The notes below the pieces were generated by a model. That model saw only the letters and a program-made list of their open reading frames with translations. It had not been told where the DNA came from and ran no database searches. Positions 24,450-53,437 of a DNA stretch of 64,000 nucleotides are shown here, one piece after another. The number at the start of each line of letters is the position of its first letter. The first letter of the stretch is position 1. The stretch is taken from the sequence record MT366760.1, one strand, 5' to 3'. Both the position numbers and the translations under genes were made by a program.

Positions 24450-24667
24450 AACTTGTACCTTGTTAGATGCCGTGTATTAATCAAACAGAACTCACCGTTA
24501 GGGTGTACTAATAAATCCATCATACCCGCCAGAGAGCTTACTTTGGATTCACTGTCCTTCTTCGCTTGTTCAATCATTCCAATTATTATCTCTTCGAGAT
24601 CCTCCACGGGAAGCATCGAATTTTCCAGTTCTGGCATCAAGTGACTTAGATGTATTTTGTTTGCCAT
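24410..24667 (-). CDS. Hypothetical protein
   Basis: Likely start MANKIHL at 24667 with an AGGA RBS; overlaps the primase 3' end. Confidence 0.45.
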   Translation of the reverse strand: MANKIHLSHLMPELENSMLPVEDLEEIIIGMIEQAKKDSESKVSSLAGMMDLLVHPNGEFCLINTRHLTRYKLCKNKMYKPVKNQ

Positions 24668-25739
24668 TTTTATTTTTCCTATACTTAGGGGATTCCTTAC
24701 CAATATGCTTACTGCTAGTTTTATTAAGCTCCTGAAGCATTTTGATGAATTTTATTTTCATGTTTCCAGGGTCAACCTTTGCTGCTTTGACCGTAATACC
24801 TTTCTTATCAGCAATGCGTTTAGCTTCTTTATATAAGTTCATAACCATCACTTTACGTTCTGAACCCAAATCAGCTTTTAAATCACGTGTAGCACCGACG
24901 CCTGCAACGTCGCCGTCCATACATAAGACTATATCACAACCCAAGGACAGCAATAGTCGTTTCTTTTTCTCAGACCACGACTGTACACCCAACACGGCAA
25001 CGGCAGGTATGCCATACTGTATTAAGCGTAATGCATCCCGTTGACCCTCAACGACAACAACCCACTTATACTTCCCCTTCTTAAGCATGTTTCTAACTAA
25101 ATCAAAAGGGAATAGACCCTTGGTACGCAGCGGACTATCATCAGATATCACATAACTAGGTGAACCAGACTTCTTTTCAAATCGAGCTTTGATAGCCGCA
25201 ATAGTTTTACCCCTGACATCAACGGGCATTATAAGGAATGGACACTTCTCACGTCGGTCGATACCAACTTCACACTTGAGTTCCCTTATCAAGTCACCAC
25301 TAATACCCCGCCATTCCTCATTGATGAACGGTAACGCCATTGGCATCTGCCATGTGTCCATATAATCTTGTAGCGAAGTACCCGACGTCGATAACAAAGA
25401 CTTCTGGATTTTAGACATAGCATGTGATGAGAAACCTGCTGAATCACGCTTGTTCTCTTTTTGGTCAATCTTTTCTAAACCGTACTTTTCAGCGAGTACG
25501 TTCCATGGTGAGGAGTGACCACAACCTAAACAATAGACCCAACCAATAGGTGCCCTACCATCTGGAGCAACATATATACCACAAGATGGTGACGAATCAC
25601 CTGCGTGGAACGGGCATAATATCTCGATTGTCTTATACGTGTACTTTTTATACCCTGGAATCTTCTCTATTTCCTTGAGTATTTTTCGGTGTGCCTTACT
25701 GACACCTTCCGACACTTCATATACTTGTCGTGACATCAT
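24570..25739 (-). CDS. dnaG: DNA primase (CHC2-type Zn finger + TOPRIM)
   Basis: CPFHAGDSSPS...YCLGCG Zn finger; VVVVEGQRDAL and VLCMDGDVAG TOPRIM motifs. Start moved to MMSRQ. Confidence 0.88.
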   Translation of the reverse strand: MMSRQVYEVSEGVSKAHRKILKEIEKIPGYKKYTYKTIEILCPFHAGDSSPSCGIYVAPDGRAPIGWVYCLGCGHSSPWNVLAEKYGLEKIDQKENKRDSAGFSSHAMSKIQKSLLSTSGTSLQDYMDTWQMPMALPFINEEWRGISGDLIRELKCEVGIDRREKCPFLIMPVDVRGKTIAAIKARFEKKSGSPSYVISDDSPLRTKGLFPFDLVRNMLKKGKYKWVVVVEGQRDALRLIQYGIPAVAVLGVQSWSEKKKRLLLSLGCDIVLCMDGDVAGVGATRDLKADLGSERKVMVMNLYKEAKRIADKKGITVKAAKVDPGNMKIKFIKMLQELNKTSSKHIGKESPKYRKNKNGKQNTSKSLDARTGKFDASRGGSRRDNNWND

Positions 25740-25801: not shown

Positions 25802-26854
25802 ATGGCAGCCAAACGTGGCTTTGGTTCGTTGAAGGGTCAGCGCATTCCCACGGTGGAAGAGACATCGAAAGAAGTGCATGACGTCATTCAGGGATTCAAC
25901 CTACTCTTTGAAAATGCAAAGAAAACAACTGAAGTGCGTGTTATAGCAGAAACACGTGTAACTGAATTACACCCCTCGTCTTTCCCATTCTGTTCAACAT
26001 ACTACGCATTAGACTACCTGATGCACGGTGACGTATTCGAACGCGAACAGGAATGCTTGATGGGTAACTATTACACTGGCATAGGTACTGTCGTTCACGA
26101 AGTTATTCAGAACGCAATTGGTGAAGCACACATGCTTGACCCTAAGAAACCTCTAGACCATTACCTTATTGGTGATTACAAGTGTAACAAATGTGGTCAC
26201 GTCCACAAGTTCTCTTCGTACCCTAAGAAGTGTAAGAAGTGTAAGCAAAAGAAATGGCGGTTCTTCTATGATGAACTAGCTGTATGGTGGGGAAAGAAGA
26301 CAGTTGGTCACTCAGATGGTTTATACTACTTTGGTGGCAAATACTGGGTTATAGATTATAAAACCACATCGTCCTTTGCTGTGATGCAGCACACTAACTC
26401 TGGTGGTAAATACTTCCCATACGACCACAACGTTCGTCAGATAAAGTCATACTGTGCTATGCTTGAAGAGAACTACAACGTTAAAATAGGTGGATGGATT
26501 CTGGTTTACGTTCCACGCGACAACTATAATAGACCAGTCGCTGTAGGTGATGACATATCTAAGAAAGAGAAGTCGAGACTTAAAACAATGCTCGATGGTT
26601 ACGACCTAAACTTCCGTCGTGTACGTTCTTTCCCCGAACAAACTTCCAAAGCGGCTATAATGAAGCTTGCTAAGAAGATAATTAAAGACAAACCCTGTCA
26701 GTGTATGAAGACGTATGAGAAGAATATGAAAGACCCTTACTTCGATTGCCCATACGCTGAAAACGGAACGTGCTTCAACAAGCAGAAGCTACTTAAACAA
26801 TTCGAGAAGCATATCAAGAAAGGTGTTTTAATCGACGTTAAACAGCTTGATTAA
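25802..26854 (+). CDS. Cas4-like / PD-(D/E)xK exonuclease with a Zn ribbon
   Basis: HPSSFPFC, GTVVHE, GHSDG...VIDYKT, QIKSY motifs; CxxC pairs; C-terminal Cys cluster. Confidence 0.8.
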   Translation: MAAKRGFGSLKGQRIPTVEETSKEVHDVIQGFNLLFENAKKTTEVRVIAETRVTELHPSSFPFCSTYYALDYLMHGDVFEREQECLMGNYYTGIGTVVHEVIQNAIGEAHMLDPKKPLDHYLIGDYKCNKCGHVHKFSSYPKKCKKCKQKKWRFFYDELAVWWGKKTVGHSDGLYYFGGKYWVIDYKTTSSFAVMQHTNSGGKYFPYDHNVRQIKSYCAMLEENYNVKIGGWILVYVPRDNYNRPVAVGDDISKKEKSRLKTMLDGYDLNFRRVRSFPEQTSKAAIMKLAKKIIKDKPCQCMKTYEKNMKDPYFDCPYAENGTCFNKQKLLKQFEKHIKKGVLIDVKQLD

Positions 26855-26861
26855 GCAATCT

Positions 26862-26869
26862 TGTAAAGT
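26862..26869 (+). promoter_or_regulatory. TGTAAAGT promoter-like motif
   Basis: Intergenic variant of the TGTAAATA motif. Confidence 0.45.
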
Positions 26870-26907
26870 AATTTCGATTATTCACCACTTATGCAAAAGG
26901 TAACGAT

Positions 26908-27540
26908 ATGAATACTACCACTCAAGAAAATTCAAACGAGCGTAACGACCCGTTCAAAAATTGGGCTCCTGCGCAAGCAACACCAGAAGGCGAACGCCAA
27001 CTGACTTTCCGCGAAGCCATTTCACGTAATCAAGGTAAAGCGGGTACAACAGACGGTCACTACCGTCATAATATGTTTAACCGCACCGGTAAGATCTACC
27101 GTGCTACAAACTACCATTCTGCAATTGATGAGCACATGGAAGTTCAGACTTTCCTTAACTCAATTGCAAACCGTCGCTTTAATACCTACTTCCATATGTT
27201 GAAGGGTACCGCGTCGCGTGGTCTACTCGTTAAAGACTGCATCCGCCTAGAGGCTCACATTGCTGTACGTCACGATGAGAAGGGTCGAATCATTCCGCCT
27301 AGCTATCGCGTAGTAGACTCCCTTGAAGTACGACTAATAGACAACCGTATTGTCCCTGTTGACGCTCAGGGTAACGAACTAACTAACAATCAAATGTTAG
27401 ACCTATTCGTTACTAAATGCCGCAAGACTGATACACCAACTCAAGATGTAACTATTCATCTTATGGGTCGCTGTACTGGCGTTGGTACTAAACAGCTTAC
27501 ATCAGGTGAAGCAACTGTAGAGGTTCGTATCAATGAATAG
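26908..27540 (+). CDS. Hypothetical protein
   Basis: 210-aa ORF with RBS. Confidence 0.6.
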   Translation: MNTTTQENSNERNDPFKNWAPAQATPEGERQLTFREAISRNQGKAGTTDGHYRHNMFNRTGKIYRATNYHSAIDEHMEVQTFLNSIANRRFNTYFHMLKGTASRGLLVKDCIRLEAHIAVRHDEKGRIIPPSYRVVDSLEVRLIDNRIVPVDAQGNELTNNQMLDLFVTKCRKTDTPTQDVTIHLMGRCTGVGTKQLTSGEATVEVRINE

Positions 27541-28051
27541 TGATCTACTAATCGGTTGGAAAGAAAACGGTGAAGTAACCATCGGTCTATTAAACCCACA
27601 AGAAGACTTGCTTACTATAGATATCTATAATCCAAAGGGTAAGTCAGTAACTGAAGTAGCGCAGGTAATTACGGGTTGGCTACTAGAATCAACAGACTTA
27701 CTCAGCCACTACGGTCTAGACCAACACCTACAAGCATCCGTACCCAACACGGTGGAATACGACAAGTTAGTACCACCTACTGTTACAGGGTTCTATACTA
27801 ATTTACCCCAAGCCTCTCAGATTGCTCAATCTGAAGAAGAACTACAACGTATGGCTATCATTGTTATGCGTATGTTCTTTAAACGTTCCGAATTCGTGTG
27901 GGAAGGTCGCTGTACCAAATTCGCAGAAGCTGTATTCAACGCTGTATGCAGCGAAGTTAACTTTACCTATATCCCACGCGCTCTACAAATGATAGAGGGC
28001 ACTGATAATGGCGAAGACAAAGAACAAAAGCAAAGCGAAGACAAATCGTAA
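27533..28051 (+). CDS. Hypothetical protein
   Basis: 172-aa ORF coupled to its neighbours. Confidence 0.55.
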   Translation: MNSDLLIGWKENGEVTIGLLNPQEDLLTIDIYNPKGKSVTEVAQVITGWLLESTDLLSHYGLDQHLQASVPNTVEYDKLVPPTVTGFYTNLPQASQIAQSEEELQRMAIIVMRMFFKRSEFVWEGRCTKFAEAVFNAVCSEVNFTYIPRALQMIEGTDNGEDKEQKQSEDKS

Positions 28052-28565
28052 GGCTATTATAGTTGCCGGAGGTAGAAAGTTTGGCAACTATAAACTTGCT
28101 TGCAAAGAAATACGTAAGTTCGCTAAGAAACTAGGTGTACCCCTAGACAACCTAGAGATAGTTTGTGGTATGGCTCTCGGTGCTGACAACATGGGTAGAT
28201 GTTTCGCTATGGAGTTCTTAGATGGACGTGTAGTTGAAATGCCTGCTGATTGGAAGAATCTAGATGCTAAACCCTGTTTAATTAAATACAACAAATATGA
28301 AGAACCCTACAATGCTCTAGCGGGTACTAATCGAAACGAGGACATGGCTAATGTCCCCAACGTTGTCGGATGTTTATGCTTCTGGGATGGTAAATCCCCA
28401 GGTACACAAGACATGATGACACGTGCTGTTAAACGTCGTAGGACTATGCAGCTTAAAGTCGTCTACTACGATAAGAAATTTAAAAAGTGCAAACCACCTA
28501 AGTCTGGTAAACCAAAGAAATCCCTTTTTTCCAAATCGGGTCGCTCCCAAAAACACATAAGGTAA
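28008..28565 (+). CDS. SLOG-superfamily (DUF2493/YspA-like) nucleotide-binding protein
   Basis: IIVAGGRKF, VCGMALGAD, PADW, RNEDMA and FWDGKSPGT motifs. Confidence 0.85.
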   Translation: MAKTKNKSKAKTNRKAIIVAGGRKFGNYKLACKEIRKFAKKLGVPLDNLEIVCGMALGADNMGRCFAMEFLDGRVVEMPADWKNLDAKPCLIKYNKYEEPYNALAGTNRNEDMANVPNVVGCLCFWDGKSPGTQDMMTRAVKRRRTMQLKVVYYDKKFKKCKPPKSGKPKKSLFSKSGRSQKHIR

Positions 28566-28569
28566 CACC

Positions 28570-28905
28570 ATGGAACAACATCTAACTACACCGCAAGAAG
28601 TAACATGTCCTGAATTAGAAGGTCATCCACGTGCCTCTGAAATTAAACGTGCAGTATTTATTTCGGCAGCGGACATCACCAATACTCCAGAAGACGAATT
28701 AACTTTCGCTCACGAGACTCATAACTACACCAATGATAACCTAGACCTTAACTTCGACAGCCTTGATACTGTAGAATTCATTATGGCTCTAGAAGAAGAA
28801 TTAGATGTAGATATCGCGGATGCCGATGTAGATCGTATGCTGAACGAAGGTGGTTCGCTAACGCTTGCTAAATGGTGTTCTTACCTAACCACACTGCTCG
28901 ACTAA
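28570..28905 (+). CDS. acpP: Acyl carrier protein
   Basis: LDLNFDSLDTVEFIMALEEELDVDIAD contains the DSL phosphopantetheinylation motif and AcpP-like helix II; acidic. Confidence 0.85.
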   Translation: MEQHLTTPQEVTCPELEGHPRASEIKRAVFISAADITNTPEDELTFAHETHNYTNDNLDLNFDSLDTVEFIMALEEELDVDIADADVDRMLNEGGSLTLAKWCSYLTTLLD

Positions 28906-28908
28906 CAT

Positions 28909-29919
28909 ATGAAGTTTGAACGTCACGATTACCTGATTGTAAAAGATGAGAAAGACCGCAAGCATCTAATTCAAGTCACGGGTAATTCAAAAGCAGAAGT
29001 AACTGGCGCACTAGAAAAGTCGCGCCACATCGAAGGTAAAGAAACTGAGTACATGACAGTTGCCGTTGAAGACGTAATTATCAATCTGGGTAATAAACCC
29101 TATGTTGGTATGGTCTATGGTTGTCGGGTAAACCCGTTACAAAACCAACTATCCTGTAACTTAGGTGACATCTATATCTACCGTGATAACGTTAAGAAGA
29201 AAGAGAAAAAGGCACTAGTTAAAGCAATTAATAGCGCACAAGCCGTCTTGAAGAATCTAGGTCTACACCACTTTCAGGAAGAACTACGTTTTGAAGTTCA
29301 TCCCCAAAAAGGTAAATACGTTGGTTGGTATACGGTGTTCTCAGCTAAGTCTGAACGTTTTGATATGGTGACTCTTAAACCACACACCTTTGACCACCGT
29401 GAACTAATGAGTATACTCTATCATGAATTCGGTCATGGTCTAGAACATCACTTGTTCACCCCTGAGTTAACTGAAGCTTGGATTAAGCTTTACCATTCTT
29501 TCACTACGGTGACGATGGCTACTAAGAAACAAGTGGAAGAAGCCCGTAAAACAGTAATTGAACAGGGCTCACACGGATTGGCTCAACAAGTGATGGAAGA
29601 GTTTGAGTCATCACTAATTGATGTCTGTGTTGGTTACATTGCTGAGAACCATTACATTGACCCTAATCGTCTCGAAATATTAATTGAGCAGGGTCATGAC
29701 TTAGTTGGTTTATGGCCTGAAACACCAATGCCAGTTACTTCAATTCAGAGTCCTATCGGTGAATACTCGGAAACTAACCCGTCCGAGTTTTTCTGTGAAG
29801 CACTTCGTATCCATCTTGATGGTAGTGTTAAACTACCTAAGAAGATTAATAAACTCCTAACTAAAACACTTAATCAATTACGTGGTCGTAAACCACAAGT
29901 TGAAGAAGACGAGGAATAA
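28909..29919 (+). CDS. Zincin-type metallopeptidase domain protein
   Basis: LYHEFGHGLEH (HExxH) and EYSETNPSEFFCEAL. Confidence 0.65.
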   Translation: MKFERHDYLIVKDEKDRKHLIQVTGNSKAEVTGALEKSRHIEGKETEYMTVAVEDVIINLGNKPYVGMVYGCRVNPLQNQLSCNLGDIYIYRDNVKKKEKKALVKAINSAQAVLKNLGLHHFQEELRFEVHPQKGKYVGWYTVFSAKSERFDMVTLKPHTFDHRELMSILYHEFGHGLEHHLFTPELTEAWIKLYHSFTTVTMATKKQVEEARKTVIEQGSHGLAQQVMEEFESSLIDVCVGYIAENHYIDPNRLEILIEQGHDLVGLWPETPMPVTSIQSPIGEYSETNPSEFFCEALRIHLDGSVKLPKKINKLLTKTLNQLRGRKPQVEEDEE

Positions 29920-29924
29920 TCCTA

Positions 29925-30881
29925 ATGGCACTTACTAAAGAAAAAGCTAAGAAGATTTTCGATGAACACCTAGCAGCTCGCAAAGACGGTAATTTCATGA
30001 CTATTACTGAAGACGCCCTAGCTTTGTTAACCAATTCTCAACGTCTGAACTATTACCAACATGGTTACGACCATCTGGGTAAACAAATCGACGGTCTAGG
30101 CAACACTATCATGCAACATTTCTCTGACGAAATGGGAACTGAACTTGATGGTAAGACTATCGGTATCAACGGTGCTTGTGAAATGGCTAGTGACCTACTA
30201 GCTACACTACCCGCTCACCGTGAGAATACTAAGAAAATCGCTGAACTAAATGTATTCCTGCAAGAATCAACTAACGCACAAGTTGGTAAAGGAGTAGTTG
30301 CTGAAGTTATCCGACTACTCACGCCTAAAGACGACGAAACATTCGTTCTTAACGCAGGTGAAGCACTATTTGGTTTCGCAGGTTGGTTAACATCACGTGA
30401 CGAAGTATCTAAGTTTGGTTCTTCCATTTGGGCTACCCCTGCCGCTGATATGGTTGCTGAATTTATCAAAGCTAACAACCTATCAGACACGGAAATCCGC
30501 GATGAATGGTCGGAACATCTGGTTCACCCAACGTGGACATTAGCTGATTCAGGTTACCCAGAAGAATCAATTACAGCCTACTTCTCACGTGGTGACGAAG
30601 ATCTACCACTCCTACCACTAGCGTGTTACCTGTGGGGTATTATCGACGATATTGATACTGCCTTCGACGTTTGTAAAGATAACGACGTTGCACTACGTGA
30701 ATCAGTCCAACACCTACAGAATAAGCGATGGAAAACAGGTGTTACAACGGATGGTCACCGCCTGTTATTGGGTAACATTAACGTACCTAAACACTACGTG
30801 GAGGGTACTGACTACTCCCTATCAACGTTCCCCGAAATTGCATTAGAAGCTGAAACTCCTAGTATCGGCACTGAAGAATAA
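29925..30881 (+). CDS. Hypothetical multidomain phage protein
   Basis: 318 aa; AGEALFGFAGWLTSR and LWGIIDDIDTAFD segments look like small phage domains. Confidence 0.6.
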   Translation: MALTKEKAKKIFDEHLAARKDGNFMTITEDALALLTNSQRLNYYQHGYDHLGKQIDGLGNTIMQHFSDEMGTELDGKTIGINGACEMASDLLATLPAHRENTKKIAELNVFLQESTNAQVGKGVVAEVIRLLTPKDDETFVLNAGEALFGFAGWLTSRDEVSKFGSSIWATPAADMVAEFIKANNLSDTEIRDEWSEHLVHPTWTLADSGYPEESITAYFSRGDEDLPLLPLACYLWGIIDDIDTAFDVCKDNDVALRESVQHLQNKRWKTGVTTDGHRLLLGNINVPKHYVEGTDYSLSTFPEIALEAETPSIGTEE

Positions 30882-30889
30882 TGTAAATA
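30882..30889 (+). promoter_or_regulatory. TGTAAATA promoter-like motif
   Basis: Immediately after a stop codon, upstream of the TGT-like gene; a CTAATTTTAAT motif also occurs at 30936. Confidence 0.55.
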
Positions 30890-30970
30890 GTTGGTATGAA
30901 CGCTAGCCGAGGACGGATGAATGTTCTCGGCTTTTCTAATTTTAATAACCCGATAACTGAGGGAGCACTC

Positions 30971-32587
30971 ATGGCACGTAAAAAGAGTAGCACTCCGCAA
31001 CCTGGTGAATACAACTTAGTTCCCGCAGGATTGTTTAGTGTTAACCATAGCGGGATGGGGTTGTATGTTCGTTACTGTAAGAACCCTAACCGTATTGATG
31101 TTGTAGAGATGTCGCCACGACACGTTTATATCAAGTGTCCTGACCGAGACCTCTATTTGGTCAGTGCTGCACACCACGCATCACACCTACGACCATCAGC
31201 AGGTACATACGATAAGTATGTTAACCTTAGCCTATTCCACGATCTCAACGCTGTAGACCACGACATCCCTTACTACATGGTGAATTATACTCAGTCACTA
31301 GGTAAAGAAGACAAGTCCCATGGGAACCGCAGACTAGACCCACGACCAATCGGGGAAAAACAAAGCAAAATTATTTCGGACTCAGGCGGCTTCCAAATTC
31401 TAATGGGACGCACCGAATACATTGACCCTCTGCAGATCATCCAATGGTATAACGAAAACGTTGATGTCGGTCTAATTCTCGATATCCCAACATTCGTTAA
31501 CAAGGATGGGTTACTCGACCGTCTAGCACGTATCCAACAAAAGAATACCCAAATCATGTTGGACAACAAACGTGACACCCTTGAACTAATGAACATCTTC
31601 CATGGACACACACCGGAGGATGTACGTAAATTCCGTGAAATAACTGAACACCCTGACATCAACCGACTAGCGTTTGGTGCATCTTACTTGGATACCGTTA
31701 TGTCTAGTCTTGGTAAGATTGCTGAAATGATGCACACGGGTAAGAAGTATGACCAGTACCACATGTTGGGCGTTGCAAACCTGAAGCAAGTATACCCACT
31801 TATCTACATGGCTAAGAAGGGATTCGCTCCAGAAATATCTAGTGATGCTTCCACATGGCTACAGGAATCTACTTCAAAAGGCTACTACCACCAAGAGCAC
31901 ATTTCGGAACCACCTGGCTTCATTAAAATGTTCGACAAGGTAAATGCACCATCACCCTATAATACACTACCATGTAATTGTCCTGTGTGTAGCAACATTA
32001 AATACACAGATGCACTATCAGTGATTAATGGTAACGTGACAACATTCCTCATGGCTCACCATAACATGTATGCCTACAATAATGTCGTGCAAGCGATGAA
32101 AGGTATCATGGCGGAAGCATCCCTTAAGGAAATTAAGGAACTCGTTGCACGCCAATTCAGAACACGTAGTGGTAAGGATGAAGCACTCAAATCATTCGAC
32201 TTTATCGAATCTATTTCTGAACATGGTGTTGATTCCTCGTACAAGAAGTTCGGCTACTACTTGAACTCTATGAAGAGTAACATGTCTAGTAACAAGACAC
32301 TCTTCGGTAAGGAGGAAGAGGATGTTGGTGAAAACGGTATCGTTCAGATTGCTGATGACGACCCACGCCTGATTCGCACACTTGAAGTATGTGATATTTA
32401 CGAAGGTAAAACTGAGCGTAAACATGGTGCTAAAAATGCCAACGCGAAGAAAACGGGACACTTGAAAGCTAGCTCTGGTGCTAAGGGAACGGCGGGTAAA
32501 CGTAAGAAACCTAAAAAGGTAAAGGCGAAAGCTAAAGACACTAAGAAGGTGACTACCAATGCCAAAGCAAAGAGTACGAAAAAGTAA
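30971..32587 (+). CDS. tgt: Queuine tRNA-ribosyltransferase (TGT) / DpdA-like 7-deazaguanine transglycosylase
   Basis: SDSGGFQ, LILDIP, HMLGV and SSDASTW catalytic motifs; CNCPVC...H Zn site; Lys-rich C-terminal tail. Start at MARKK after GGAG. Confidence 0.8.
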   Translation: MARKKSSTPQPGEYNLVPAGLFSVNHSGMGLYVRYCKNPNRIDVVEMSPRHVYIKCPDRDLYLVSAAHHASHLRPSAGTYDKYVNLSLFHDLNAVDHDIPYYMVNYTQSLGKEDKSHGNRRLDPRPIGEKQSKIISDSGGFQILMGRTEYIDPLQIIQWYNENVDVGLILDIPTFVNKDGLLDRLARIQQKNTQIMLDNKRDTLELMNIFHGHTPEDVRKFREITEHPDINRLAFGASYLDTVMSSLGKIAEMMHTGKKYDQYHMLGVANLKQVYPLIYMAKKGFAPEISSDASTWLQESTSKGYYHQEHISEPPGFIKMFDKVNAPSPYNTLPCNCPVCSNIKYTDALSVINGNVTTFLMAHHNMYAYNNVVQAMKGIMAEASLKEIKELVARQFRTRSGKDEALKSFDFIESISEHGVDSSYKKFGYYLNSMKSNMSSNKTLFGKEEEDVGENGIVQIADDDPRLIRTLEVCDIYEGKTERKHGAKNANAKKTGHLKASSGAKGTAGKRKKPKKVKAKAKDTKKVTTNAKAKSTKK

Positions 32588-33023
32588 AAACCAAAAATCA
32601 GACGAGGGTTTGAGTGTTGCTAAACTAATACAGACCACTCGTCGATTCCGATACTTAGACGCATCATCAAGGGACGTTCGCTTATACCGACCACTTCGTA
32701 TGAAGGGCGAGAACGGGGTACGCATTGAGGCTTCAGCTAAATCGCGTATTTCGAAGCAAAATAGAAACCCACAAGTACACAGATGCTCTATGGAATGTAT
32801 TAATGGCTATGACCGCTTAACACATAAGAAAGCACGCGTTAAGGTTTCTTGTGATTGTGAGTTCTTTACATACACATGTGAGGTCGCACTATATCGCTAT
32901 GGAGCTGCTGATATCATCTTTAGTAATGGTGAATACCCGTACTCCACAAACCCCCGTGGTTTACCTATTATGTGTAAGCACCTTTTATCCATGGCTAAAG
33001 CTATTCAGAAGAAAGGGTTCTGA
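32559..33023 (+). CDS. SWIM-type Zn-finger protein
   Basis: KVSCDCEFF...TNPRGLPIMCKHL (CxC...CxH). Confidence 0.7.
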   Translation: MPKQRVRKSKNQKSDEGLSVAKLIQTTRRFRYLDASSRDVRLYRPLRMKGENGVRIEASAKSRISKQNRNPQVHRCSMECINGYDRLTHKKARVKVSCDCEFFTYTCEVALYRYGAADIIFSNGEYPYSTNPRGLPIMCKHLLSMAKAIQKKGF

Positions 33024-33028
33024 TTATT

Positions 33029-33976
33029 GTGTCAGACTCTATGAGCTACCTAAAGGCTAACGACCCCAATGAGATGCAGTTGTCATCTAATCAGATATTC
33101 ACATTGTTTGACGACCTGATTTATCGAGCAGTAGACTGCCTGATTGATAACTGCGACTTCGTTGACAAATCATTAGCCTCAGTATTATCTTGGTATAACG
33201 CCAACAAGAGAAGACGTTTAAGTAGATTAGTCCGACAAGAAGCTGTCAGCTTAATGATGAGCTACCTGATAACACCCGACCGCGAACTTAAGAAAGAAAT
33301 ACTCCGCGAGTTGATGTTAGAAAGGGGTTTAATGTTAGCTATACTAGAACAGTTCCTTGTAGTAACTAAGAACTACCAAACGTGTGTCCACCGAACAATA
33401 AATTTTAACTCTCGTTACTATAATTCGGTGTCCCAAGAACGCAGGTCTATTGAGAGACAAGTCGGTGTTCTAAAGGATGGGAACTTGTATTGCGCAATCA
33501 ACACTATTGACCTGTGGCATTCTACAGCTATAGATATGCGTAATAGGATAATGCGTAAACACACTAGATACATCTTTAGTAAAGTTCGTTCAGAAGGTAA
33601 TCGGGCAACCACGCCTATAGACTTGAATGACATGGCTCAGAATTATGTAGTCGCACTACTCAAGGCTATCTATAAATACTTACCTGAACGTGGTACTTTC
33701 CAATCGTACCTTGAATACTGGTTACTTGATGCTAAGACCAACAGTGGTTCCAAACACTATTATGGTTTAGCCTTTGATGTGCCCAGTATGGAAACTTTAG
33801 AAAAGAATTCACTCTCAAATTTATCTATCCCTCTATCAGCAGAAGAAGTTCAGATGGTGTCTACTCATGGCGTCGAACAGGAAGTTTGCGATAACTCGCA
33901 TATCCTTAGAATCCGTGAGTTAGCTTTATACGCAGATCCACTTGGATATGCACGTGAAGCGTTAAACATCGACTAA
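33029..33976 (+). CDS. Sigma70-like transcription factor (region 2)
   Basis: DLNDMAQNYVVALLKAIYKYLPERGTFQSYLEYWL resembles sigma region 2.2-2.4 (DLIQEG..GL.KA..KFDP.RG..F.TYA.WWI). Confidence 0.65.
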   Translation: MSDSMSYLKANDPNEMQLSSNQIFTLFDDLIYRAVDCLIDNCDFVDKSLASVLSWYNANKRRRLSRLVRQEAVSLMMSYLITPDRELKKEILRELMLERGLMLAILEQFLVVTKNYQTCVHRTINFNSRYYNSVSQERRSIERQVGVLKDGNLYCAINTIDLWHSTAIDMRNRIMRKHTRYIFSKVRSEGNRATTPIDLNDMAQNYVVALLKAIYKYLPERGTFQSYLEYWLLDAKTNSGSKHYYGLAFDVPSMETLEKNSLSNLSIPLSAEEVQMVSTHGVEQEVCDNSHILRIRELALYADPLGYAREALNID

Positions 33977-33982
33977 TGTTTC

Positions 33983-33990
33983 TGTAAATA
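33983..33990 (+). promoter_or_regulatory. TGTAAATA promoter-like motif
   Basis: Intergenic, upstream of SSB. Confidence 0.6.
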
Positions 33991-34028
33991 AATATCACAA
34001 CACAAGCTAAACTCAATTGGAGAATAAC

Positions 34029-35024
34029 ATGGCTGAAAGAAAACGTGGCTTTGGCGGTTTAAAGACTGGAGGCGACAAAGCTAAACGTCTAGAAGATCAG
34101 GTAGAAATGTTGACACTGCCGAAGGACGGTTCGTGGGTTACAGTTCGTATCATAGGTGATGTTCATTCCACCGCTATCCGTTGGATTGACATCATTACCC
34201 AGAAAGGTCAGATCTCAATTCCTAAAGTAGCGCTGAACTACGATGCGGATACCGACGACTTCGATTCAACAATTGAAGATCCGTACGAAGAAATTTCTAA
34301 CCCTCAACGTTTAAGTACAACGCACTACGTTAACGTTCTAGTTCGTGATCTTGAAGACACTGAACCTAAGAAGAACAAACCAACATCAGGTGAGAAAAAG
34401 TCGGGTTTCAAAGACAAGAACTCTAAGTCGTGGACGCCAATTCGTGTACTACGTGTTCCTAAAGGTCTTGCGGGTAAACTGGCTAGTCTTATCGCCCTTA
34501 ACAAGCACAAGACTAAGAAAGGTACTGAAGCATTCGAACTATCCGACATCGAGTATGGTTGTGATGTTCACGTATCCTTCGACGATAGTAAGTCGCCTAG
34601 TGAGAAGTACTCAGTTCAAAAAGCAGAACATACTCCGCTGTCTAAAGCTGAACAGAAACTACTAGTATGGGACATCGCAACCAATCTAACCCCACCTGAA
34701 TCATTGGAAGTAGCTCGTAAAGAAGCTGAAAACTTGGAAGGTAAAGCTCCAATGGACGAAGAAGACGACGGTGACGAAGACGATTTCGATGTCAAAGACA
34801 AAAAGAAAAAGTCTAAAAAGTCTAAGAAAGACGATGATAAGAAGTCTAAAGACAAAAAGTCTAAGGGTAAGAAAGACTTCGATATCGACGACGATTTCAA
34901 AGACGATAAAAAGTCTAAAAAGTCTAAGAAAGACGACAAAGCTAAGTCTAAGAAAGATGACGGTAAAAAGTCTAAGAAAGACGACAAAGCTAAATCTAAA
35001 GACAAAAAGAAAAAGAAGAAGTAA
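34029..35024 (+). CDS. Single-stranded DNA-binding protein (gp32-like) with an acidic then Lys-rich tail
   Basis: VTVRIIG, HYVNVLVRD, LSDIEYGCDVHVSFD...KYSVQ gp32-like pattern; lies upstream of the recombinase. Confidence 0.65.
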   Translation: MAERKRGFGGLKTGGDKAKRLEDQVEMLTLPKDGSWVTVRIIGDVHSTAIRWIDIITQKGQISIPKVALNYDADTDDFDSTIEDPYEEISNPQRLSTTHYVNVLVRDLEDTEPKKNKPTSGEKKSGFKDKNSKSWTPIRVLRVPKGLAGKLASLIALNKHKTKKGTEAFELSDIEYGCDVHVSFDDSKSPSEKYSVQKAEHTPLSKAEQKLLVWDIATNLTPPESLEVARKEAENLEGKAPMDEEDDGDEDDFDVKDKKKKSKKSKKDDDKKSKDKKSKGKKDFDIDDDFKDDKKSKKSKKDDKAKSKKDDGKKSKKDDKAKSKDKKKKKK

Positions 35025-35038
35025 CCCTTCACTAACAC

Positions 35039-35046
35039 TGTAAATA
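35039..35046 (+). promoter_or_regulatory. TGTAAATA promoter-like motif
   Basis: Intergenic, upstream of the acidic repeat gene. Confidence 0.6.
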
Positions 35047-35111
35047 TGTGGTGTGGCAACAACGTCACATCACACTCAATAAATTAAATCTCATTATTAG
35101 GAAAACCTATC

Positions 35112-35870
35112 ATGGCTAAAAAAGTAAATGTTGCTGAACTACTAGTTGAAGCTGTTACCCTTAACGTTACTCTTGGTGAACTTATCGGTGATGCTGATGA
35201 GAAGTGTGGTGATAAGAAGGTTACCAAACTACTTGGTAAAGCTGCTGAAGCTCAAGAAGAATTGAGCGAACTACTTAACAAACTAGCAGGTGACTCGGAC
35301 GCTGACGCTGAAGAAGAAACTGAAGTTGACATTGAAGAGCTGCGCGAGCAAGCTATCGAACTTGGCATGAAAAAGAAAGATGCCAAGAAAGCAGACGAAG
35401 ACGAGCTGCAAGAATTCATTGATGAAAACTCTGAAGAAGAGGAAGAAGTCGATGAAGACGAACTCCGTGAAGAAGCTATCGAACTTGGCATGAAAAAGAA
35501 AGATGCTAAGAAAGCTTCAGTAGAAGAACTCCAAGAGTTCATTGAAGAAAATGCCGAAGAAGAGGAAGAAGGCGAAGAAGAAGAGGAAGAAGTAGACATC
35601 GAAGATCTTCGTGAACAAGCAATCGCTTTAGGCATGAAAAAGAAAGATGCTAAGAAAGCGGATGAAGACGAACTTCAAGAATTCATCGACGAAAACGGTG
35701 AAGAAGAAGGCGAAGAAGAGGAGGAAGAAGATGAAATCAACCTCGATGAACTAGAAGACGACGAACTAATCGCACTAGCTGTCAAAATGAAACTAGGTAA
35801 GAAGAAAGATCTTGCTGACGTTAAAGCTAAGAAACTTCGTAAAATGATTGCGGAAGCTCTAGAAGACTGA
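35112..35870 (+). CDS. Highly acidic protein with three tandem helix-turn-helix-like repeats
   Basis: Three copies of (E/D)LRE(Q/E)AIxLGMKKKDAKKAxx(D/E)ELQEFIxEN separated by poly-Glu linkers. Confidence 0.75.
   Translation: MAKKVNVAELLVEAVTLNVTLGELIGDADEKCGDKKVTKLLGKAAEAQEELSELLNKLAGDSDADAEEETEVDIEELREQAIELGMKKKDAKKADEDELQEFIDENSEEEEEVDEDELREEAIELGMKKKDAKKASVEELQEFIEENAEEEEEGEEEEEEVDIEDLREQAIALGMKKKDAKKADEDELQEFIDENGEEEGEEEEEEDEINLDELEDDELIALAVKMKLGKKKDLADVKAKKLRKMIAEALED
35335..35700 (+). repeat. Three coding tandem repeats
   Basis: Identical 20-mer GGCATGAAAAAGAAAGATGC at 35364, 35487 and 35631. Confidence 0.9.
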
Positions 35871-36011
35871 AAGAGTAACGGTAAGTCGGGTGGTGTGAAC
35901 TACAACCCATCTTCAGGTGGATTCTTTAATGAAGCACCGGATGCGTTGGAAGACGGGAACCGCCCGTCAACCCCGAAGTCTTCTAAGAAGAAAAAGCGCA
36001 AGTAATAAAAC

Positions 36012-36041
36012 GGCAGGTTGGCGAAAGCTGCCTGCCATTTT
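36012..36041 (+). terminator. Rho-independent terminator
   Basis: GGCAGG-TTGGC-GAAA-GCTG-CCTGCC followed by ATTTT. Confidence 0.75.
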
Positions 36042-36066
36042 AGTTTTCCCTCAATAAGGATTAATT

Positions 36067-37578
36067 ATGGCACCTAAAAAGAAACCGGCAGGTAAAGCCG
36101 TGGACACTGAAGAAAAGCCAAAGAAAACTCCTAAGAAAGCAACGGCAGCAAAGAAAACGTCGCCAAGTAAATCAGCCTTAGCAGTATCCGAAGCACTTCA
36201 AGACACTTACGACTTACTTGGTGTGTCTAGCCTGTTAGACGATATGGAACGCGAGTTTAAATTGGCGTCGTCCTCGACTGATACGGATGCACGCTCATCC
36301 ACATGTGTATCATCTGGTCTACTTATGACTGACTTAATGTTGGCAGGCGGTATCTATGGTGGTGGTTGGTACACAATACTCGGTCCTGAGGGCTCATGTA
36401 AAACTACTCACCTAATGTGTTGGTTAGAACAGTTGTTTATGTCAGATATCCCAATCATTCAGCATTGGGATTACGAAGGTTCTACAACACCTGACTATAT
36501 GCAGTCTATCCTAGAAGGTCGTGGTTCTAAACTTGACGTTAAACGTCTATTCGGTTTACGAGATCCCGACCATCCAGAGAAATGGGCAGTTGAACCCCGT
36601 ATCCGTTACTATCCCGAATCAGAAGGTGAGCGTTTCTACAAAGCAGTTGGTAACCTGCTTAAACGTCTACCAGACAAACTATGTATCAATGGTATCTGGT
36701 ACTTAGGGTTCGAACGTACCAAACAAAACATCTCACGACTAAAAGGTAAGTACGATACTAAACTTAGCACTAAGTATGGTCGCCTAATGGTGGAGTCACC
36801 TAATGGTGGTCAGATGCAAGCACTATTCATCCTTGATTCGTTCCCTGCTATGACTGCCGAAATCGACGATGAAGGTGAAGGCTCTAACGGTCTAGCACTT
36901 GATGCACGTATGCATTCTAAGCACTACAAGAAAGTACGTTCCAAACTGAAACGTAAGAATGCTACATTGGTCGGTGTTAACCAAGTCCGTCTAAACCCAG
37001 GTGCTCGCTTCGGTAACCCTGAATATGAGCCGTGTGGTAACGCGATTAAACACGCATCTGATGCTCGTATTCGTCAAGCTCCTCGTGCAATTCCACACGG
37101 AACGGGTAGCATCGAAGAAGAAGACTCATGTCTAATCGAAGGTGGTACTGACCAATACAAATACATCCATATGCGTGCTGTTAAGAACAAGCTTGGTGTA
37201 GACAACCTAGAAGTTTGGCACCGTCTATGGATGGTTGATGGTGAGGGTAAAGGTCGTGGTATTGACCCCGTGTGGGACACATTCCAGTACCTTAAGTCAA
37301 CAGGTCAGTGTGACGGTACTATGAAGAAGATGAACATCACGCTTCATGACGGCTCATTCGAGATATCTAAACTTTCATGGTTCGACTTCAAGTGTCTAGT
37401 ACTTCTAACTGGCGCTGATCTACGCGCTCATTGTGAAGAACTTGGTATCGACAAAAATCCTAAACTTCGTGAGAAGTGTTTCAAGCAGATTGCTTCCGGT
37501 GACGGTATGAAACACTACTTCAACACCCTGAATGGCGCGTTGTACGACGAAGAAGAGGAAGACGAAGACGACCTCTAG
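36067..37578 (+). CDS. recA: RecA/UvsX-like recombinase
   Basis: Walker A GPEGSCKTT, FILDS Walker B, VGVNQVR..PGARFGNPEYEPCGNAIKH. Confidence 0.9.
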   Translation: MAPKKKPAGKAVDTEEKPKKTPKKATAAKKTSPSKSALAVSEALQDTYDLLGVSSLLDDMEREFKLASSSTDTDARSSTCVSSGLLMTDLMLAGGIYGGGWYTILGPEGSCKTTHLMCWLEQLFMSDIPIIQHWDYEGSTTPDYMQSILEGRGSKLDVKRLFGLRDPDHPEKWAVEPRIRYYPESEGERFYKAVGNLLKRLPDKLCINGIWYLGFERTKQNISRLKGKYDTKLSTKYGRLMVESPNGGQMQALFILDSFPAMTAEIDDEGEGSNGLALDARMHSKHYKKVRSKLKRKNATLVGVNQVRLNPGARFGNPEYEPCGNAIKHASDARIRQAPRAIPHGTGSIEEEDSCLIEGGTDQYKYIHMRAVKNKLGVDNLEVWHRLWMVDGEGKGRGIDPVWDTFQYLKSTGQCDGTMKKMNITLHDGSFEISKLSWFDFKCLVLLTGADLRAHCEELGIDKNPKLREKCFKQIASGDGMKHYFNTLNGALYDEEEEDEDDL

Positions 37579-37587
37579 GCTAAAAGG

Positions 37588-38109
37588 ATGGACAAGGATG
37601 TCCGTACGATTATGACTGATAATAACAAACTCTATATTTATCTAGCAGGTCTCCACGAAACTCGTATGCACATGCAGATGCATCAAAGCTTTATCCGTAA
37701 CCTAATCAAAGACACATTTGAAACTGATGGGTTCCAACCTGAAGTAGTATTTACTTGTGAAGATTGGATTAATAACCCTACTTACCAAGTGGTAGACGAA
37801 AGGGCTTCTACTGATTATTATGGTGTTAAAAACTGTGACATCTTTATTAGCTTTTCGCCACATGGTCTGGGTACTTCGAGTGAAATGGGTTATGCTATGG
37901 GTTTATCCAAACCCGCTATCCACTTGATGCCAGAAGAATATTATGACAAGGGTAACACTGACCTATTACCCCTAGGTAGATACAAGCACGTTACTAACAA
38001 CGATGATGTGTTCTTCGCTATAACGCACCATGAGTCCAGAATACTCACAACGGATGTTGAATGGTTTTCATACGCTCTAAGTCGCTTAGCTCGCGGGAAG
38101 TTCCTGTGA
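37588..38109 (+). CDS. Nucleoside 2-deoxyribosyltransferase / nucleotide N-glycosidase-like protein
   Basis: CDIFISF...GTSSEMGYAMGLSKP matches the NDT GT..E.GYA...KP motif. Confidence 0.7.
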   Translation: MDKDVRTIMTDNNKLYIYLAGLHETRMHMQMHQSFIRNLIKDTFETDGFQPEVVFTCEDWINNPTYQVVDERASTDYYGVKNCDIFISFSPHGLGTSSEMGYAMGLSKPAIHLMPEEYYDKGNTDLLPLGRYKHVTNNDDVFFAITHHESRILTTDVEWFSYALSRLARGKFL

Positions 38110-38603
38110 CTAACCCAACCCGTAAGGAAGTAACTGATGGACTAACCCTCGCGGGAATCGGTTACTTGACTAAGAAAGGCTTTGCTTGTGACACTGAACT
38201 ATCAGTAGTTCCTTGGGGAGACTTGAGGACTGATGTCTATGGTTTCAATATGCAAGGTGAAATCAACATACTTGAAATCAAATCATGTCACGCAGACTTC
38301 AAAGCGGATAACGATAGGGGCAAATGGAAAAACTATGTGAAGTATGCCCATAAGATGTACTTCCTAATACGTGATAAAGACCTTAAGTGGATGGAACAAT
38401 ACATCCCTGATTTAAAGGAGCAAGGTGTTGGCTTAATGTTGCTCAGCTCCTATAGCGGTCTTATCACAGTACACACTAATGCTAAGAAAAGACGAGTACC
38501 CGCACCTTGTCGTATTGGTAACCTGATACGATTCGCATGGCGTAACGCTCCGTTTTCCCGTAGAAAGGGTACAAAACGTAGACGTGTCTTTTTCCAAGAT
38601 TAA
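38106..38603 (+). CDS. MmcB-like PD-(D/E)xK nuclease
   Basis: RTDVYGF...ILEIKSCHADFKAD...KWKNYVKYAHKMYF; GTG start overlaps the upstream TGA. Confidence 0.75.
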   Translation: MTNPTRKEVTDGLTLAGIGYLTKKGFACDTELSVVPWGDLRTDVYGFNMQGEINILEIKSCHADFKADNDRGKWKNYVKYAHKMYFLIRDKDLKWMEQYIPDLKEQGVGLMLLSSYSGLITVHTNAKKRRVPAPCRIGNLIRFAWRNAPFSRRKGTKRRRVFFQD

Positions 38604-53182: not shown

Positions 53183-53437
53183 ATGACGGATTTACTTAGT
53201 ATATTCAGGGGCATCTGTAAGTTCAAAAGTTATAGTGTTGCTGACAATGCATCTGACGAAGTTGTAGAAGACTTCCTTCGCCACCAAGTATCCTGTCCGA
53301 TAGGGCTTTGGTCAGTTGATGGGTTACCAGAACAAGCGGAGACTGAAGCATTTCATTACTTTGAGCAATACTATTCTGATGGTGAATATACCGAACAGAT
53401 TAAAGAATGGGAACGTAAGACAAATGGCGAAGCTTAA
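53183..53437 (+). CDS. Hypothetical protein
   Basis: 84-aa ORF with a GAGGA RBS. Confidence 0.55.
   Translation: MTDLLSIFRGICKFKSYSVADNASDEVVEDFLRHQVSCPIGLWSVDGLPEQAETEAFHYFEQYYSDGEYTEQIKEWERKTNGEA

What the first reader, a model, noticed from the sequence alone, without database searches (positions are those of the whole stretch)
25802..37578. Lys-rich, NLS-like terminal tags on unrelated DNA-metabolism proteins
Seen: basic low-complexity ends on SLOG (MAKTKNKSKAKTNRK...KKCKPPKSGKPKK), TGT (GKRKKPKKVKAKAKDTKK...KSTKK), SWIM (MPKQRVRKSKNQK), SSB (...KDKKKKK) and RecA (MAPKKKPAGK...KPKKTPKK). Outside this span they also occur on SbcD (MAKLKNKDKAKK), DnaX (...STKKKK) and primase (KYRKNKNGK). 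The baseplate, fibre and 41-52 kb structural proteins lack them. Established: typical bacterial and T4 homologues of RecA, SSB, DnaX and SbcD have no such tags, and several have acidic tails. Inference: the tags may be a shared addressing or retention signal that concentrates phage proteins on phage DNA or in a replication compartment/condensate. This is my best candidate for an undescribed system in the window.
Basis: partly seen in the sequence, partly recalled or inferred. Interest (0 to 1): 0.72.

Follow-up and report, generated by a model that had tools for sequence, protein, structure and literature searches.

The report
Basic DNA-tethering tails on phage enzymes
A jumbo Vibrio phage and its relatives carry floppy, positively charged tails on many DNA-handling enzymes; these tails most likely hold the enzymes on DNA by charge, a trick known from histones and some bacteria but not yet described as a lineage-wide habit in phages.

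Summary
The window is Vibrio phage vB_VcorM_GR7B (record bases 124001-188000). The Lys-rich ends are real. Long low-complexity basic termini are 7-24 times more frequent than in 926 control phage proteins (p about 4e-4). Among proteins of known function they sit almost only on DNA-acting ones: 8/25, against 0/53 small-molecule enzymes and virion proteins (p = 5e-5).

They are not a base-composition artefact. The genome has no A bias, AAA/AAG usage in the tags matches the genome, and relatives with 37-55% GC keep the tags.

Conservation is in character, not sequence. Tags diverge, change length, switch ends (RecA, a helicase) or are lost (SLOG, SbcD and DnaX in phage Lauda). Of 112 RecA homologues, 44 have a basic N-terminus. 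AlphaFold models show the RecA and SSB tags as disordered flanks of confident cores.

Best reading: non-specific electrostatic DNA-binding tails of the histone H1 / Ku / Streptomyces TopA kind. This supports "retention on DNA". I found no shared motif, receptor, shell, tubulin or phage RNA polymerase, so a dedicated addressing system is not supported. A charge-driven replication condensate remains possible, because the SSB tail and the acidic protein g178 are blocky polyampholytes. Ordinary mechanism, new lineage: moderate interest.

The parts
24573..24746 (-). Basic C-terminal tail (58 aa, net +9) of DnaG-type primase (gene 24570-25736)
   Evidence: Basic tail also in GR11A (+17), Lauda and L010 (+6).
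28008..28052 (+). Basic N-terminal tag (15 aa) of the SLOG/YAcAr protein (gene 28008-28565); overlaps the end of the upstream ORF by 44 nt
   Evidence: score 10.5. Kept in GR11A, absent in Lauda.
28473..28562 (+). Basic C-terminal tag (30 aa) of the SLOG/YAcAr protein
   Evidence: Kept in GR11A, absent in Lauda.
32411..32584 (+). Basic C-terminal tail (58 aa, 20 K + 2 R, net +20) of the TGT/DpdA-like protein (gene 30971-32587)
   Evidence: (score 20). Basic tail in 5 of 6 lineages (+12 to +20); only 7 aa in Motura.
32559..32597 (+). Basic N-terminal tag (13 aa) of a SWIM-like protein (gene 32559-33023); its first 29 nt are shared with the TGT tail
   Evidence: Pfam gives no SWIM hit. Not independent of the TGT tail.
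34029..34703 (+). gp32-type SSB core with a short basic N-terminal motif (KRGFGxLK at 34029-34076)
   Evidence: PHROG 15004, E = 3e-47. AlphaFold pLDDT >90 for residues 21-240. Foldseek match to RB69/T4 gp32 core, probability 1.00.
34704..35021 (+). SSB C-terminal tail, 106 aa: 73% charged, blocks of Lys and Asp, ending in six Lys; built partly of 24/48-nt tandem repeats
   Evidence: score 39.5; charge blocks z = 3.6 against shuffles; pLDDT about 50, no secondary structure. Family survey.
35112..35870 (+). g178: acidic protein (net -0.23 per residue) with 3-4 repeats of a short Lys-rich helix motif between poly-Glu linkers; a possible partner or counter-ion of the basic tags (inferred)
   Evidence: 123/144-nt repeats; blockiness z = 6.6. 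Orthologues in GR11A, Lauda and L013. Only sub-threshold SAP/HeH-like Pfam hits.
36067..36201 (+). Basic N-terminal tag (about 45 aa, 12 K, net +8) of the RecA/UvsX-like recombinase (gene 36067-37578)
   Evidence: 44/112 homologues have a basic N-terminus. RecA profile; pLDDT 46-72, no secondary structure before residue 35.
37537..37575 (+). Acidic C-terminal tip (13 aa, net -9) of the same recombinase
   Evidence: 37/112 homologues have an acidic last 40 aa; pLDDT 43-57.
38553..38600 (+). Basic C-terminal end (16 aa) of the MmcB-like nuclease (gene 38061-38603)
53424..53459 (+). Short basic N-terminal tag (12 aa) of the SbcD-like nuclease (gene 53424-54488); below the strict threshold
   Evidence: Absent in Lauda and Motura.
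55642..55656 (+). Five-Lys C-terminal end of the DnaX-like clamp loader (gene 54490-55659)
   Evidence: A basic C tail is also present in the L013 homologue; lost in Lauda.

Best explanation
The Lys/Arg-rich termini are intrinsically disordered, non-sequence-specific polyanion-binding tails. In this jumbo-phage lineage (GR7B/GR11A, the Lauda-like Pseudomonas phages, Motura, and uncultured relatives) they have repeatedly been added to enzymes whose substrate is the DNA polymer. Part of the addition arose by repeat expansion.

By electrostatic attraction to the phosphate backbone, the tails raise the local concentration, residence time or processivity of each enzyme on DNA. This also enriches those enzymes wherever phage DNA accumulates.

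Shown here: existence, excess over controls, association with DNA-acting proteins, predicted disorder, conservation of charge without conservation of sequence or position, and independence from base composition. Inferred: that the tails bind DNA, and what that does for each enzyme.
For: 1. Excess: 7-24-fold over 926 control phage proteins and over internal windows of the same proteome.

2. Function: strict tags on 8/25 DNA-acting proteins against 0/19 small-molecule enzymes and 0/34 virion proteins (p = 4.6e-5). Lenient tags 13/25 against 1/19 and 1/34 (p = 1.7e-6). Tagged proteins include two helicases, HNH, a topoisomerase-like protein, GyrA-like, Rep, NADAR, TGT, SSB, RecA, MmcB and DnaX.

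3. Not composition: genome A 28.4% and T 28.9%; AAA share of Lys codons 0.47 in tags against 0.51 genome-wide. Tags persist at 37-55% GC, and Arg partly replaces Lys in Lauda and L010.

4. Plasticity typical of composition-driven tails. The RecA tag is N-terminal in GR7B, GR11A, Lauda and Motura but C-terminal in L010. The helicase tag is C-terminal in GR7B and N-terminal in Lauda.

5. Family depth: 44/112 RecA homologues have net >= +6 in their first 40 aa. Some of these tails hold AT-hook-like RGRP/RGRK repeats, a known DNA-binding motif.

6. Disorder: AlphaFold gives confident cores with low-confidence, structure-free tags for RecA and SSB.

7. Precedent: Lys-rich low-complexity tails of histones, Ku, topoisomerases and HU-like proteins bind DNA non-specifically (PMC6821194 and its references, including PMC5714199).
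Against: - No DNA-binding measurement exists for any of these proteins.
- Several core DNA enzymes are untagged: the DNA polymerase, both ligases, the DnaB-like helicase, the topoisomerase II large subunit and RNase H.
- One small-molecule enzyme (Nudix NudI) is tagged.
- Tags are labile. In Lauda, SLOG, SbcD, DnaX-C, Rep, NudI and other tags are absent.
- Most SSB-family tails are net negative (105 of 137), so the SSB tail is not simply a DNA anchor.
- A generic enrichment of K/R in the last and first few residues occurs in unrelated phages too.
Confidence: 0.6

Rival explanations
1. Electrostatic addressing to a membraneless replication factory. The basic tags, the blocky polyampholyte SSB tail, the acidic repeat protein g178 and phage DNA co-condense, and the tags act as client signals that partition enzymes into this phase.
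For: - The SSB tail is 73% charged, with charge blocks more segregated than 500/500 shuffles (z = 3.6). g178 shows z = 6.6.
- RecA joins a basic N tail to an acidic C tip.
- g178 lies between SSB and RecA and is kept in GR11A, Lauda and L013.
- Several small, very basic proteins of unknown function exist, for example a 101-aa protein about 45% K/R with a Lauda orthologue.
- Many unrelated proteins share the same kind of tag.
Against: - No observation of any compartment.
- No shared motif.
- Tags are lost or moved freely among relatives.
- Every feature is also explained by plain DNA binding.
- Blocky charge patterns are suggestive only.
Confidence: 0.15
2. Targeting into a protein-bounded phage nucleus of the chimallivirus kind, with the tags acting as import signals.
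For: The phage is a jumbo phage (207,758 bp) and the tags look like classical nuclear localisation signals.
Against: - No RNA polymerase subunits or tubulin among 240 annotated products.
- Five of the ten large proteins scanned (512-766 aa) have no PHROG match at all, although phiKZ-like families are in that library.
- The phage encodes a sigma-70-like factor, as does its supergroup (PMC7412058), which implies use of the host polymerase.
- From my own knowledge, import into chimallivirus nuclei is not reported to use simple basic tags.
Confidence: 0.03
3. By-product without function: A-rich coding, gene overlaps, ribosome-binding regions, or the known preference for Lys/AAA codons just after the start codon.
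For: - The SWIM-like N tag and the TGT tail share 29 nt. The SLOG N tag overlaps the upstream ORF by 44 nt.
- 24/240 proteins start M-[AST]-K.
- K/R is enriched at positions 2-5 and in the last 5 residues in control phages as well.
- Tandem DNA repeats underlie the SSB tail.
Against: - The long tags (20-100 aa) exceed controls 7-24-fold.
- There is no genomic A bias and Lys codon usage in the tags is normal.
- Tags are retained at 50-55% GC.
- The functional association is strong.
- 44/112 RecA homologues keep a basic N tail.
Confidence: 0.07
4. The tails bind another polyanion rather than DNA: polyphosphate made by the phage's own PPK1, RNA, or acidic membrane lipids.
For: - GR7B and GR11A encode a full-length polyphosphate kinase 1.
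- The SSB tail resembles acidic-Ser-Lys tracts discussed as polyphosphate targets (PMC8345927 appeared; I did not read it in depth).
Against: - PPK1 is absent from the other tag-bearing relatives in the phage collection.
- Arg replaces Lys in some relatives.
- The tagged proteins are DNA enzymes, not RNA or membrane proteins.
Confidence: 0.07

Closest known systems
Lys-rich low-complexity tails of bacterial DNA proteins (Streptomyces TopA C-terminal Lys repeats, mycobacterial Ku and HupB) and the histone H1 C-terminal domain
   Same: Terminal, disordered, K-rich, poorly conserved in sequence, attached to DNA-acting proteins. In Actinobacteria they are also a lineage-wide habit. They give non-specific DNA affinity or processivity (PMC6821194; PMC5714199 cited there).
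   Different: Here the carriers are phage RecA, DpdA-like TGT, primase, helicases, clamp loader, NADAR and a gp32-type SSB. No repeat unit such as PAKKA is shared. DNA binding is untested.
AT-hook motifs
   Same: Some RecA homologues carry repeated RGRP/RGRK cores within the basic N tail.
   Different: The GR7B tags contain no GRP core; they are plain Lys-rich tracts.
T4/RB69 gp32 (basic N-terminal domain, OB-fold core, acidic C-terminal domain)
   Same: The core fold matches. There is a short basic N-terminal motif and a long disordered C tail.
   Different: The GR7B tail is an alternating Lys/Asp polyampholyte ending in six Lys, not a purely acidic domain. In the family, 38% of representatives end basic and 46% acidic.
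Bacterial SSB disordered linker with acidic tip (DDIPF type)
   Same: A charged disordered tail on an SSB. 27 of 147 family representatives end in an acidic-aromatic tip, Motura among the sequenced relatives.
   Different: GR7B lacks that tip, and the SSB fold is gp32-type, not the bacterial homotetramer type.
Chimallivirus phage nucleus and its protein import
   Same: Jumbo phage; many replication proteins would need a common destination.
   Different: No shell, tubulin or phage RNA polymerase detected. Different supergroup (PMC7412058).

Membership tests
Lys-rich low-complexity DNA-binding tails (H1 / Ku / TopA kind) | Terminal, K/R-rich, low-complexity segment outside the catalytic core | tested here: met
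   Alignments to homologues start after, or end before, the tags.
Lys-rich low-complexity DNA-binding tails (H1 / Ku / TopA kind) | Intrinsic disorder | tested here: met
   AlphaFold. RecA residues 1-34 have pLDDT 46-72 and no secondary structure. SSB residues 241-331 have pLDDT about 50. Not modelled for the other proteins.
Lys-rich low-complexity DNA-binding tails (H1 / Ku / TopA kind) | Carried by proteins that act on DNA | tested here: met
   8/25 against 0/53 (strict) and 13/25 against 2/53 (lenient). One exception, NudI.
Lys-rich low-complexity DNA-binding tails (H1 / Ku / TopA kind) | Composition conserved while sequence drifts | tested here: met
Lys-rich low-complexity DNA-binding tails (H1 / Ku / TopA kind) | Non-specific binding to DNA | not testable with these tools
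   Needs biophysical or structural description.
Classical nuclear localisation signal | Recognition by an importin-type receptor | not testable with these tools
   The K-K/R-x-K/R pattern is present trivially. No receptor is known in bacteria (my own knowledge). No candidate was found in the annotation.
Chimallivirus nucleus-forming phages | Shell protein (chimallin), PhuZ tubulin, split multisubunit RNA polymerases | tested here: not met
   None among the 240 annotated products. Five of the ten large proteins scanned are unknowns with no PHROG match. A sigma-70-like factor is present instead. The test is by sequence only; no fold search was run for chimallin.
RecA/UvsX recombinases | RecA ATPase core | tested here: met
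   Pfam RecA, E = 1.8e-14. The family profile hits bacterial RecA structures at about 1e-42. The model has pLDDT 90.8.
gp32-type SSB | gp32 core fold | tested here: met
   Foldseek match to RB69 and T4 gp32 core: probability 1.00, E = 1.5e-4, TM 0.55 on target length. PHROG 15004. No sequence hit in the PDB.
TGT/DpdA | TGT barrel | tested here: inconclusive
   Pfam TGT scores 23.9 bits, below the 26.3 cut-off, and covers residues 359-421 only. Weak hit to archaeosine TGT, E = 9e-5. Annotated as TGT in three phages.
SWIM zinc finger | CxC...CxH domain recognised by a profile | tested here: not met
   No Pfam hit at E <= 0.01. Only a CxC...CxH-like spacing is visible in the sequence.
AT-hook | R-G-R-P core flanked by basic residues | tested here: not met
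   Absent from the GR7B tags. Present in the N tails of some RecA homologues.

The most novel reading that the evidence does not exclude
In this non-nucleus jumbo-phage supergroup, the basic tags, the polyampholyte gp32-type SSB tail and the acidic repeat protein g178 form a charge-coded, membraneless replication and recombination factory. A simple compositional 'address' would then decide which enzymes are clients. This would be a phage counterpart of nucleolar or viral-factory condensates, and an alternative to the chimallin shell.
Probability: 0.12. Interest if true: 0.7.

Novelty: new member of a known kind. Interest (0 to 1): 0.36.

Why it matters
If the tails are DNA tethers, their presence becomes a cheap annotation clue in these poorly annotated jumbo phages. 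It predicts that tagged enzymes work on the DNA polymer rather than on free nucleotides. Examples are the SLOG protein and the NADAR protein, plus several proteins of unknown function.

It also shows that a viral lineage can tune many replication and repair enzymes at once through a compositional trait. That is relevant to how large phages organise replication without a shell.

The SSB family has two alternative end states, an acidic tip or a poly-basic end. This offers a natural comparison for how SSB tails recruit partners.

Tried and rejected
- A-rich strand bias: rejected (relatives at 37-55% GC).
- Shared sequence motif in the tags: none beyond composition. KPKK occurs in four tags, but about that number is expected from tag composition (my estimate).
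- Polyphosphate link: PPK1 is confined to GR7B and GR11A.
- Programmed frameshift at the DnaX Lys run: the sequence is not a proper slippery heptamer, and the -1 frame adds only a few residues.
- Chimallin, tubulin or phage RNA polymerase: nothing found.
- SAP/HeH assignment of the g178 repeats: only sub-threshold Pfam hits.
- Literature: no paper on GR7B, on the Lauda phages, or on basic tags in phage replication proteins was found.
- My first simple gene caller mis-set several starts, so I used annotated starts for N-terminal statistics.
- Rfam and tRNA scans of the window were empty.

The gp32 comparison in this report rests only on the Foldseek hits.

Full report
**Identity of the window.** The finding's span (window 25802-37578) is 100% identical to Vibrio phage vB_VcorM_GR7B, MT366760.1. 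Window coordinate = record coordinate - 124000, and the assembled record's bases 124001-188000 are identical to the whole window. The phage is a 207,758-bp myovirus of Vibrio coralliilyticus. The nearest relative is GR11A (77% nucleotide identity over a third of the span). By RecA similarity, more distant relatives are the about 200-kb Pseudomonas putida phages (Lauda and others), Achromobacter phage Motura, and the Erwinia/Dickeya phages Alexandra, Yoloswag and AD1. The literature places Motura and those Erwinia/Dickeya phages in or next to the PaBG/Lu11 group. That group has a sigma-70-like factor, Pol III gamma and beta subunits, and a Cas4-like nuclease (PMC7412058).

**The observation.** Translating the annotated genes shows every quoted terminus, and each start is preceded by a plausible ribosome-binding site.
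- Confirmed identities: DnaG-type primase, SLOG/YAcAr, RecA, clamp loader, metallophosphatase (SbcD-like), MmcB-like nuclease, and SSB (PHROG 15004).
- TGT is below the Pfam cut-off but is annotated as TGT in three phages. 'SWIM' is not confirmed by any profile.
- The SWIM-like N tag shares its first 29 nt with the TGT tail, so it is not independent evidence.

**Is it more than chance?** I rebuilt the whole genome and its 240 annotated proteins.
- Terminal 20-residue windows with net charge >= +7 number 6 (N) and 14 (C) of 235 proteins. The rate for internal windows is 0.57%.
- A T4-like control (Aeromonas phage 44RR2.8t) also showed mildly basic C termini. The mean K/R profile of the first and last residues is the same in GR7B and in controls. 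Simple counts therefore overstate the case.
- I then scored low-complexity basic prefixes and suffixes: K/R rewarded, acidic and hydrophobic residues penalised. I compared GR7B with 926 proteins from the T4-like region and from 38 unrelated viral loci fetched around NrdD.
- Scores >= 10 at the C terminus: 9/240 against 5/926 (odds ratio 7.2, p = 4e-4).
- Scores >= 14 at the C terminus: 6/240 against 1/926 (p = 4e-4).
- Scores >= 10 at the N terminus: 3/240 against 0/926 (p = 0.009).
- The unusual feature is a minority of long tags: 14 proteins by the strict criterion and 35 by a lenient one.

One of these is a 101-residue protein that is about 45% Lys/Arg.
- Among proteins of known class, strict tags occur on 8/25 DNA-acting proteins, 0/19 small-molecule enzymes or chaperones, and 0/34 virion-module proteins (p = 4.6e-5).
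- Lenient tags occur on 13/25, 1/19 and 1/34 (p = 1.7e-6). The virion class is partly assigned by position in the tail/baseplate modules, which is an inference.
- Untagged DNA enzymes exist: the polymerase, both ligases, the DnaB-like helicase, the topoisomerase II large subunit and RNase H.

**Composition artefact?** No.
- The genome is 28.4% A and 28.9% T.
- Tag DNA is A-rich because it encodes Lys, but AAA makes up 47% of Lys codons in tags against 51% genome-wide.
- Relatives with 50-55% GC keep the tags, partly swapping Lys for Arg.
- Tandem 24/48-nt repeats in the SSB tail show one way such tails grow.

**Conservation.**
- In GR11A every tag of the span is kept in character but not in sequence.
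- Across seven lineages (GC 37-55%), the TGT tail is basic in 5 of 6 (+12 to +20). The primase tail is basic in all 4 lineages where the gene was found. The SSB has a long, highly charged tail in 7 of 7.
- The RecA tag is N-terminal in GR7B, GR11A, Lauda and Motura, short in L011, and replaced by a basic C-terminal end in L010.
- In Lauda the large helicase carries its tag at the N rather than the C terminus. The L013 clamp loader keeps a basic C tail.
- Many tags are lost in Lauda: SLOG at both ends, SbcD, DnaX-C, Rep and NudI.
- Of 112 RecA homologues from public data, 44 have net >= +6 in the first 40 residues, 39 reach the tag score at the N terminus and 3 at the C terminus, and 37 end in an acidic tail. 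Some N tails consist of AT-hook-like repeats.
- For the SSB core, 352 cluster representatives match at E <= 1e-10. Among the best 147, tails have a median length of 154 residues and a median charged fraction of 0.61. The last ten residues are strongly basic in 38% and acidic in 46%. 27 of them end in an acidic-aromatic tip.

**Structure.**
- AlphaFold models built on these alignments give a confident RecA core (mean pLDDT 90.8). Residues 1-34 and the last 13 are low-confidence and lack secondary structure.
- The SSB model has a confident core (residues 21-240) followed by 90 disordered residues.
- The SSB core matches the RB69/T4 gp32 core by Foldseek (probability 1.00), although it has no sequence match in the PDB.

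**Interpretation.** Five observations fit the known class of Lys-rich low-complexity tails that bind DNA electrostatically, as in H1, Ku, Streptomyces TopA and HU-like proteins (PMC6821194):
- association with DNA-acting proteins;
- predicted disorder;
- charge kept while sequence, length and even terminus vary;
- occasional AT-hook-like repeats;
- independence from base composition.

A dedicated addressing system is not supported. There is no common motif and no candidate receptor. No shell, tubulin or phage RNA polymerase was found, and a sigma-like factor points to cytoplasmic transcription by the host enzyme.

A charge-driven condensate cannot be excluded. The SSB tail and the neighbouring acidic repeat protein g178 are blocky polyampholytes (z = 3.6 and 6.6 against shuffles), and RecA pairs a basic N tail with an acidic C tip. 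That is suggestive only. A polyphosphate link via the phage PPK1 is unlikely to be general, because PPK1 occurs only in GR7B and GR11A.

**Novelty.** I found no paper describing this trait in phages. The mechanism is ordinary, but the lineage-wide use on phage RecA, DpdA-like TGT, primase, helicases and a gp32-type SSB appears undescribed. I class it as a new member of a known kind, of moderate interest.

Noticed in passing
window 25802-25849 and 34029-34076: The Cas4-like PD-(D/E)XK nuclease (g167) and the gp32-type SSB (g177) begin with nearly the same peptide (KRGFGxLK, 8 of 10 residues). Only 4 [KR]GFG occur in the proteome, about 1.2 expected. The core K/R-G-F-G/A is kept at the N terminus of both proteins in GR11A and Lauda, and of the SSB in L010 and L013. 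24/147 family representatives have GF[GAS] in the first 45 residues. It may be a shared docking peptide on the SSB filament.
   Followed up: partly
window 35112-35870: g178 lies between SSB and RecA. It is a strongly acidic protein with 3-4 repeats (123/144-nt DNA units) of a short Lys-rich helix motif that resembles SAP/HeH DNA-binding motifs. Only sub-threshold Pfam hits support this (Slx4, Fan1_SAP; Ish1 for a similar motif at the C end of RecA homologue P0005). In Motura and L011 a similar acidic region is part of the long SSB tail, with no separate gene.
   Followed up: partly
L008:6070-8073 (-), record 193070-195073, outside the window: The phage encodes a full four-domain polyphosphate kinase 1. 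Among phage records it is found only in GR7B and GR11A, apart from metagenomic or doubtful records.
   Followed up: partly
L006:21295-21600 (-) and L006:37100-37246 (-), outside the window: Two small proteins (101 aa and 48 aa) are almost entirely Lys/Arg-rich and have no family match. The first has a 49%-identical orthologue in Lauda. They are candidates for phage histone- or protamine-like DNA-coating proteins.
   Followed up: partly
L008:9247-9915 (+), outside the window: A NADAR-domain protein (Pfam E = 6e-22) carries the strongest N-terminal tag in the genome, 12 K/R in the first 20 residues. This suggests it works on the DNA polymer.
   Followed up: partly
window 2982-4031: A 349-aa protein in the baseplate/tail module is 17.8% Lys, with an internal Lys/Pro-rich stretch, and has no Pfam match. 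It is an exception to 'structural proteins lack such tracts'.
   Followed up: no
whole GR7B record (L005-L007) and window 30971-32587: A full 7-deazaguanine set is present: two QueC-like genes, a radical-SAM QueE-like gene, GTP cyclohydrolase I, a PTPS-like gene and the TGT/DpdA-like gene. A lysine 2,3-aminomutase and an acyl carrier protein lie near the SLOG gene. This suggests that the phage DNA carries a modified guanine.
   Followed up: no
proteins P0014, P0024, P0085, P0096, P0100, P0102; Erwinia/Dickeya phage hits in two pieces: Several RecA homologues of this family are 627-881 aa long and carry intein (PF14890, PF14528) or homing-endonuclease-type domains. In the Erwinia/Dickeya phages the gene matches in two pieces.
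   Followed up: no
SSB family, proteins P0113-P0262: This viral gp32-type SSB family has two alternative ends: an acidic tip, often DDIPF-like, or a poly-basic end (46% against 38% of 147 representatives).
   Followed up: partly
window 1-64000: No tRNA gene and no Rfam family at gathering threshold anywhere in the window.
   Followed up: yes
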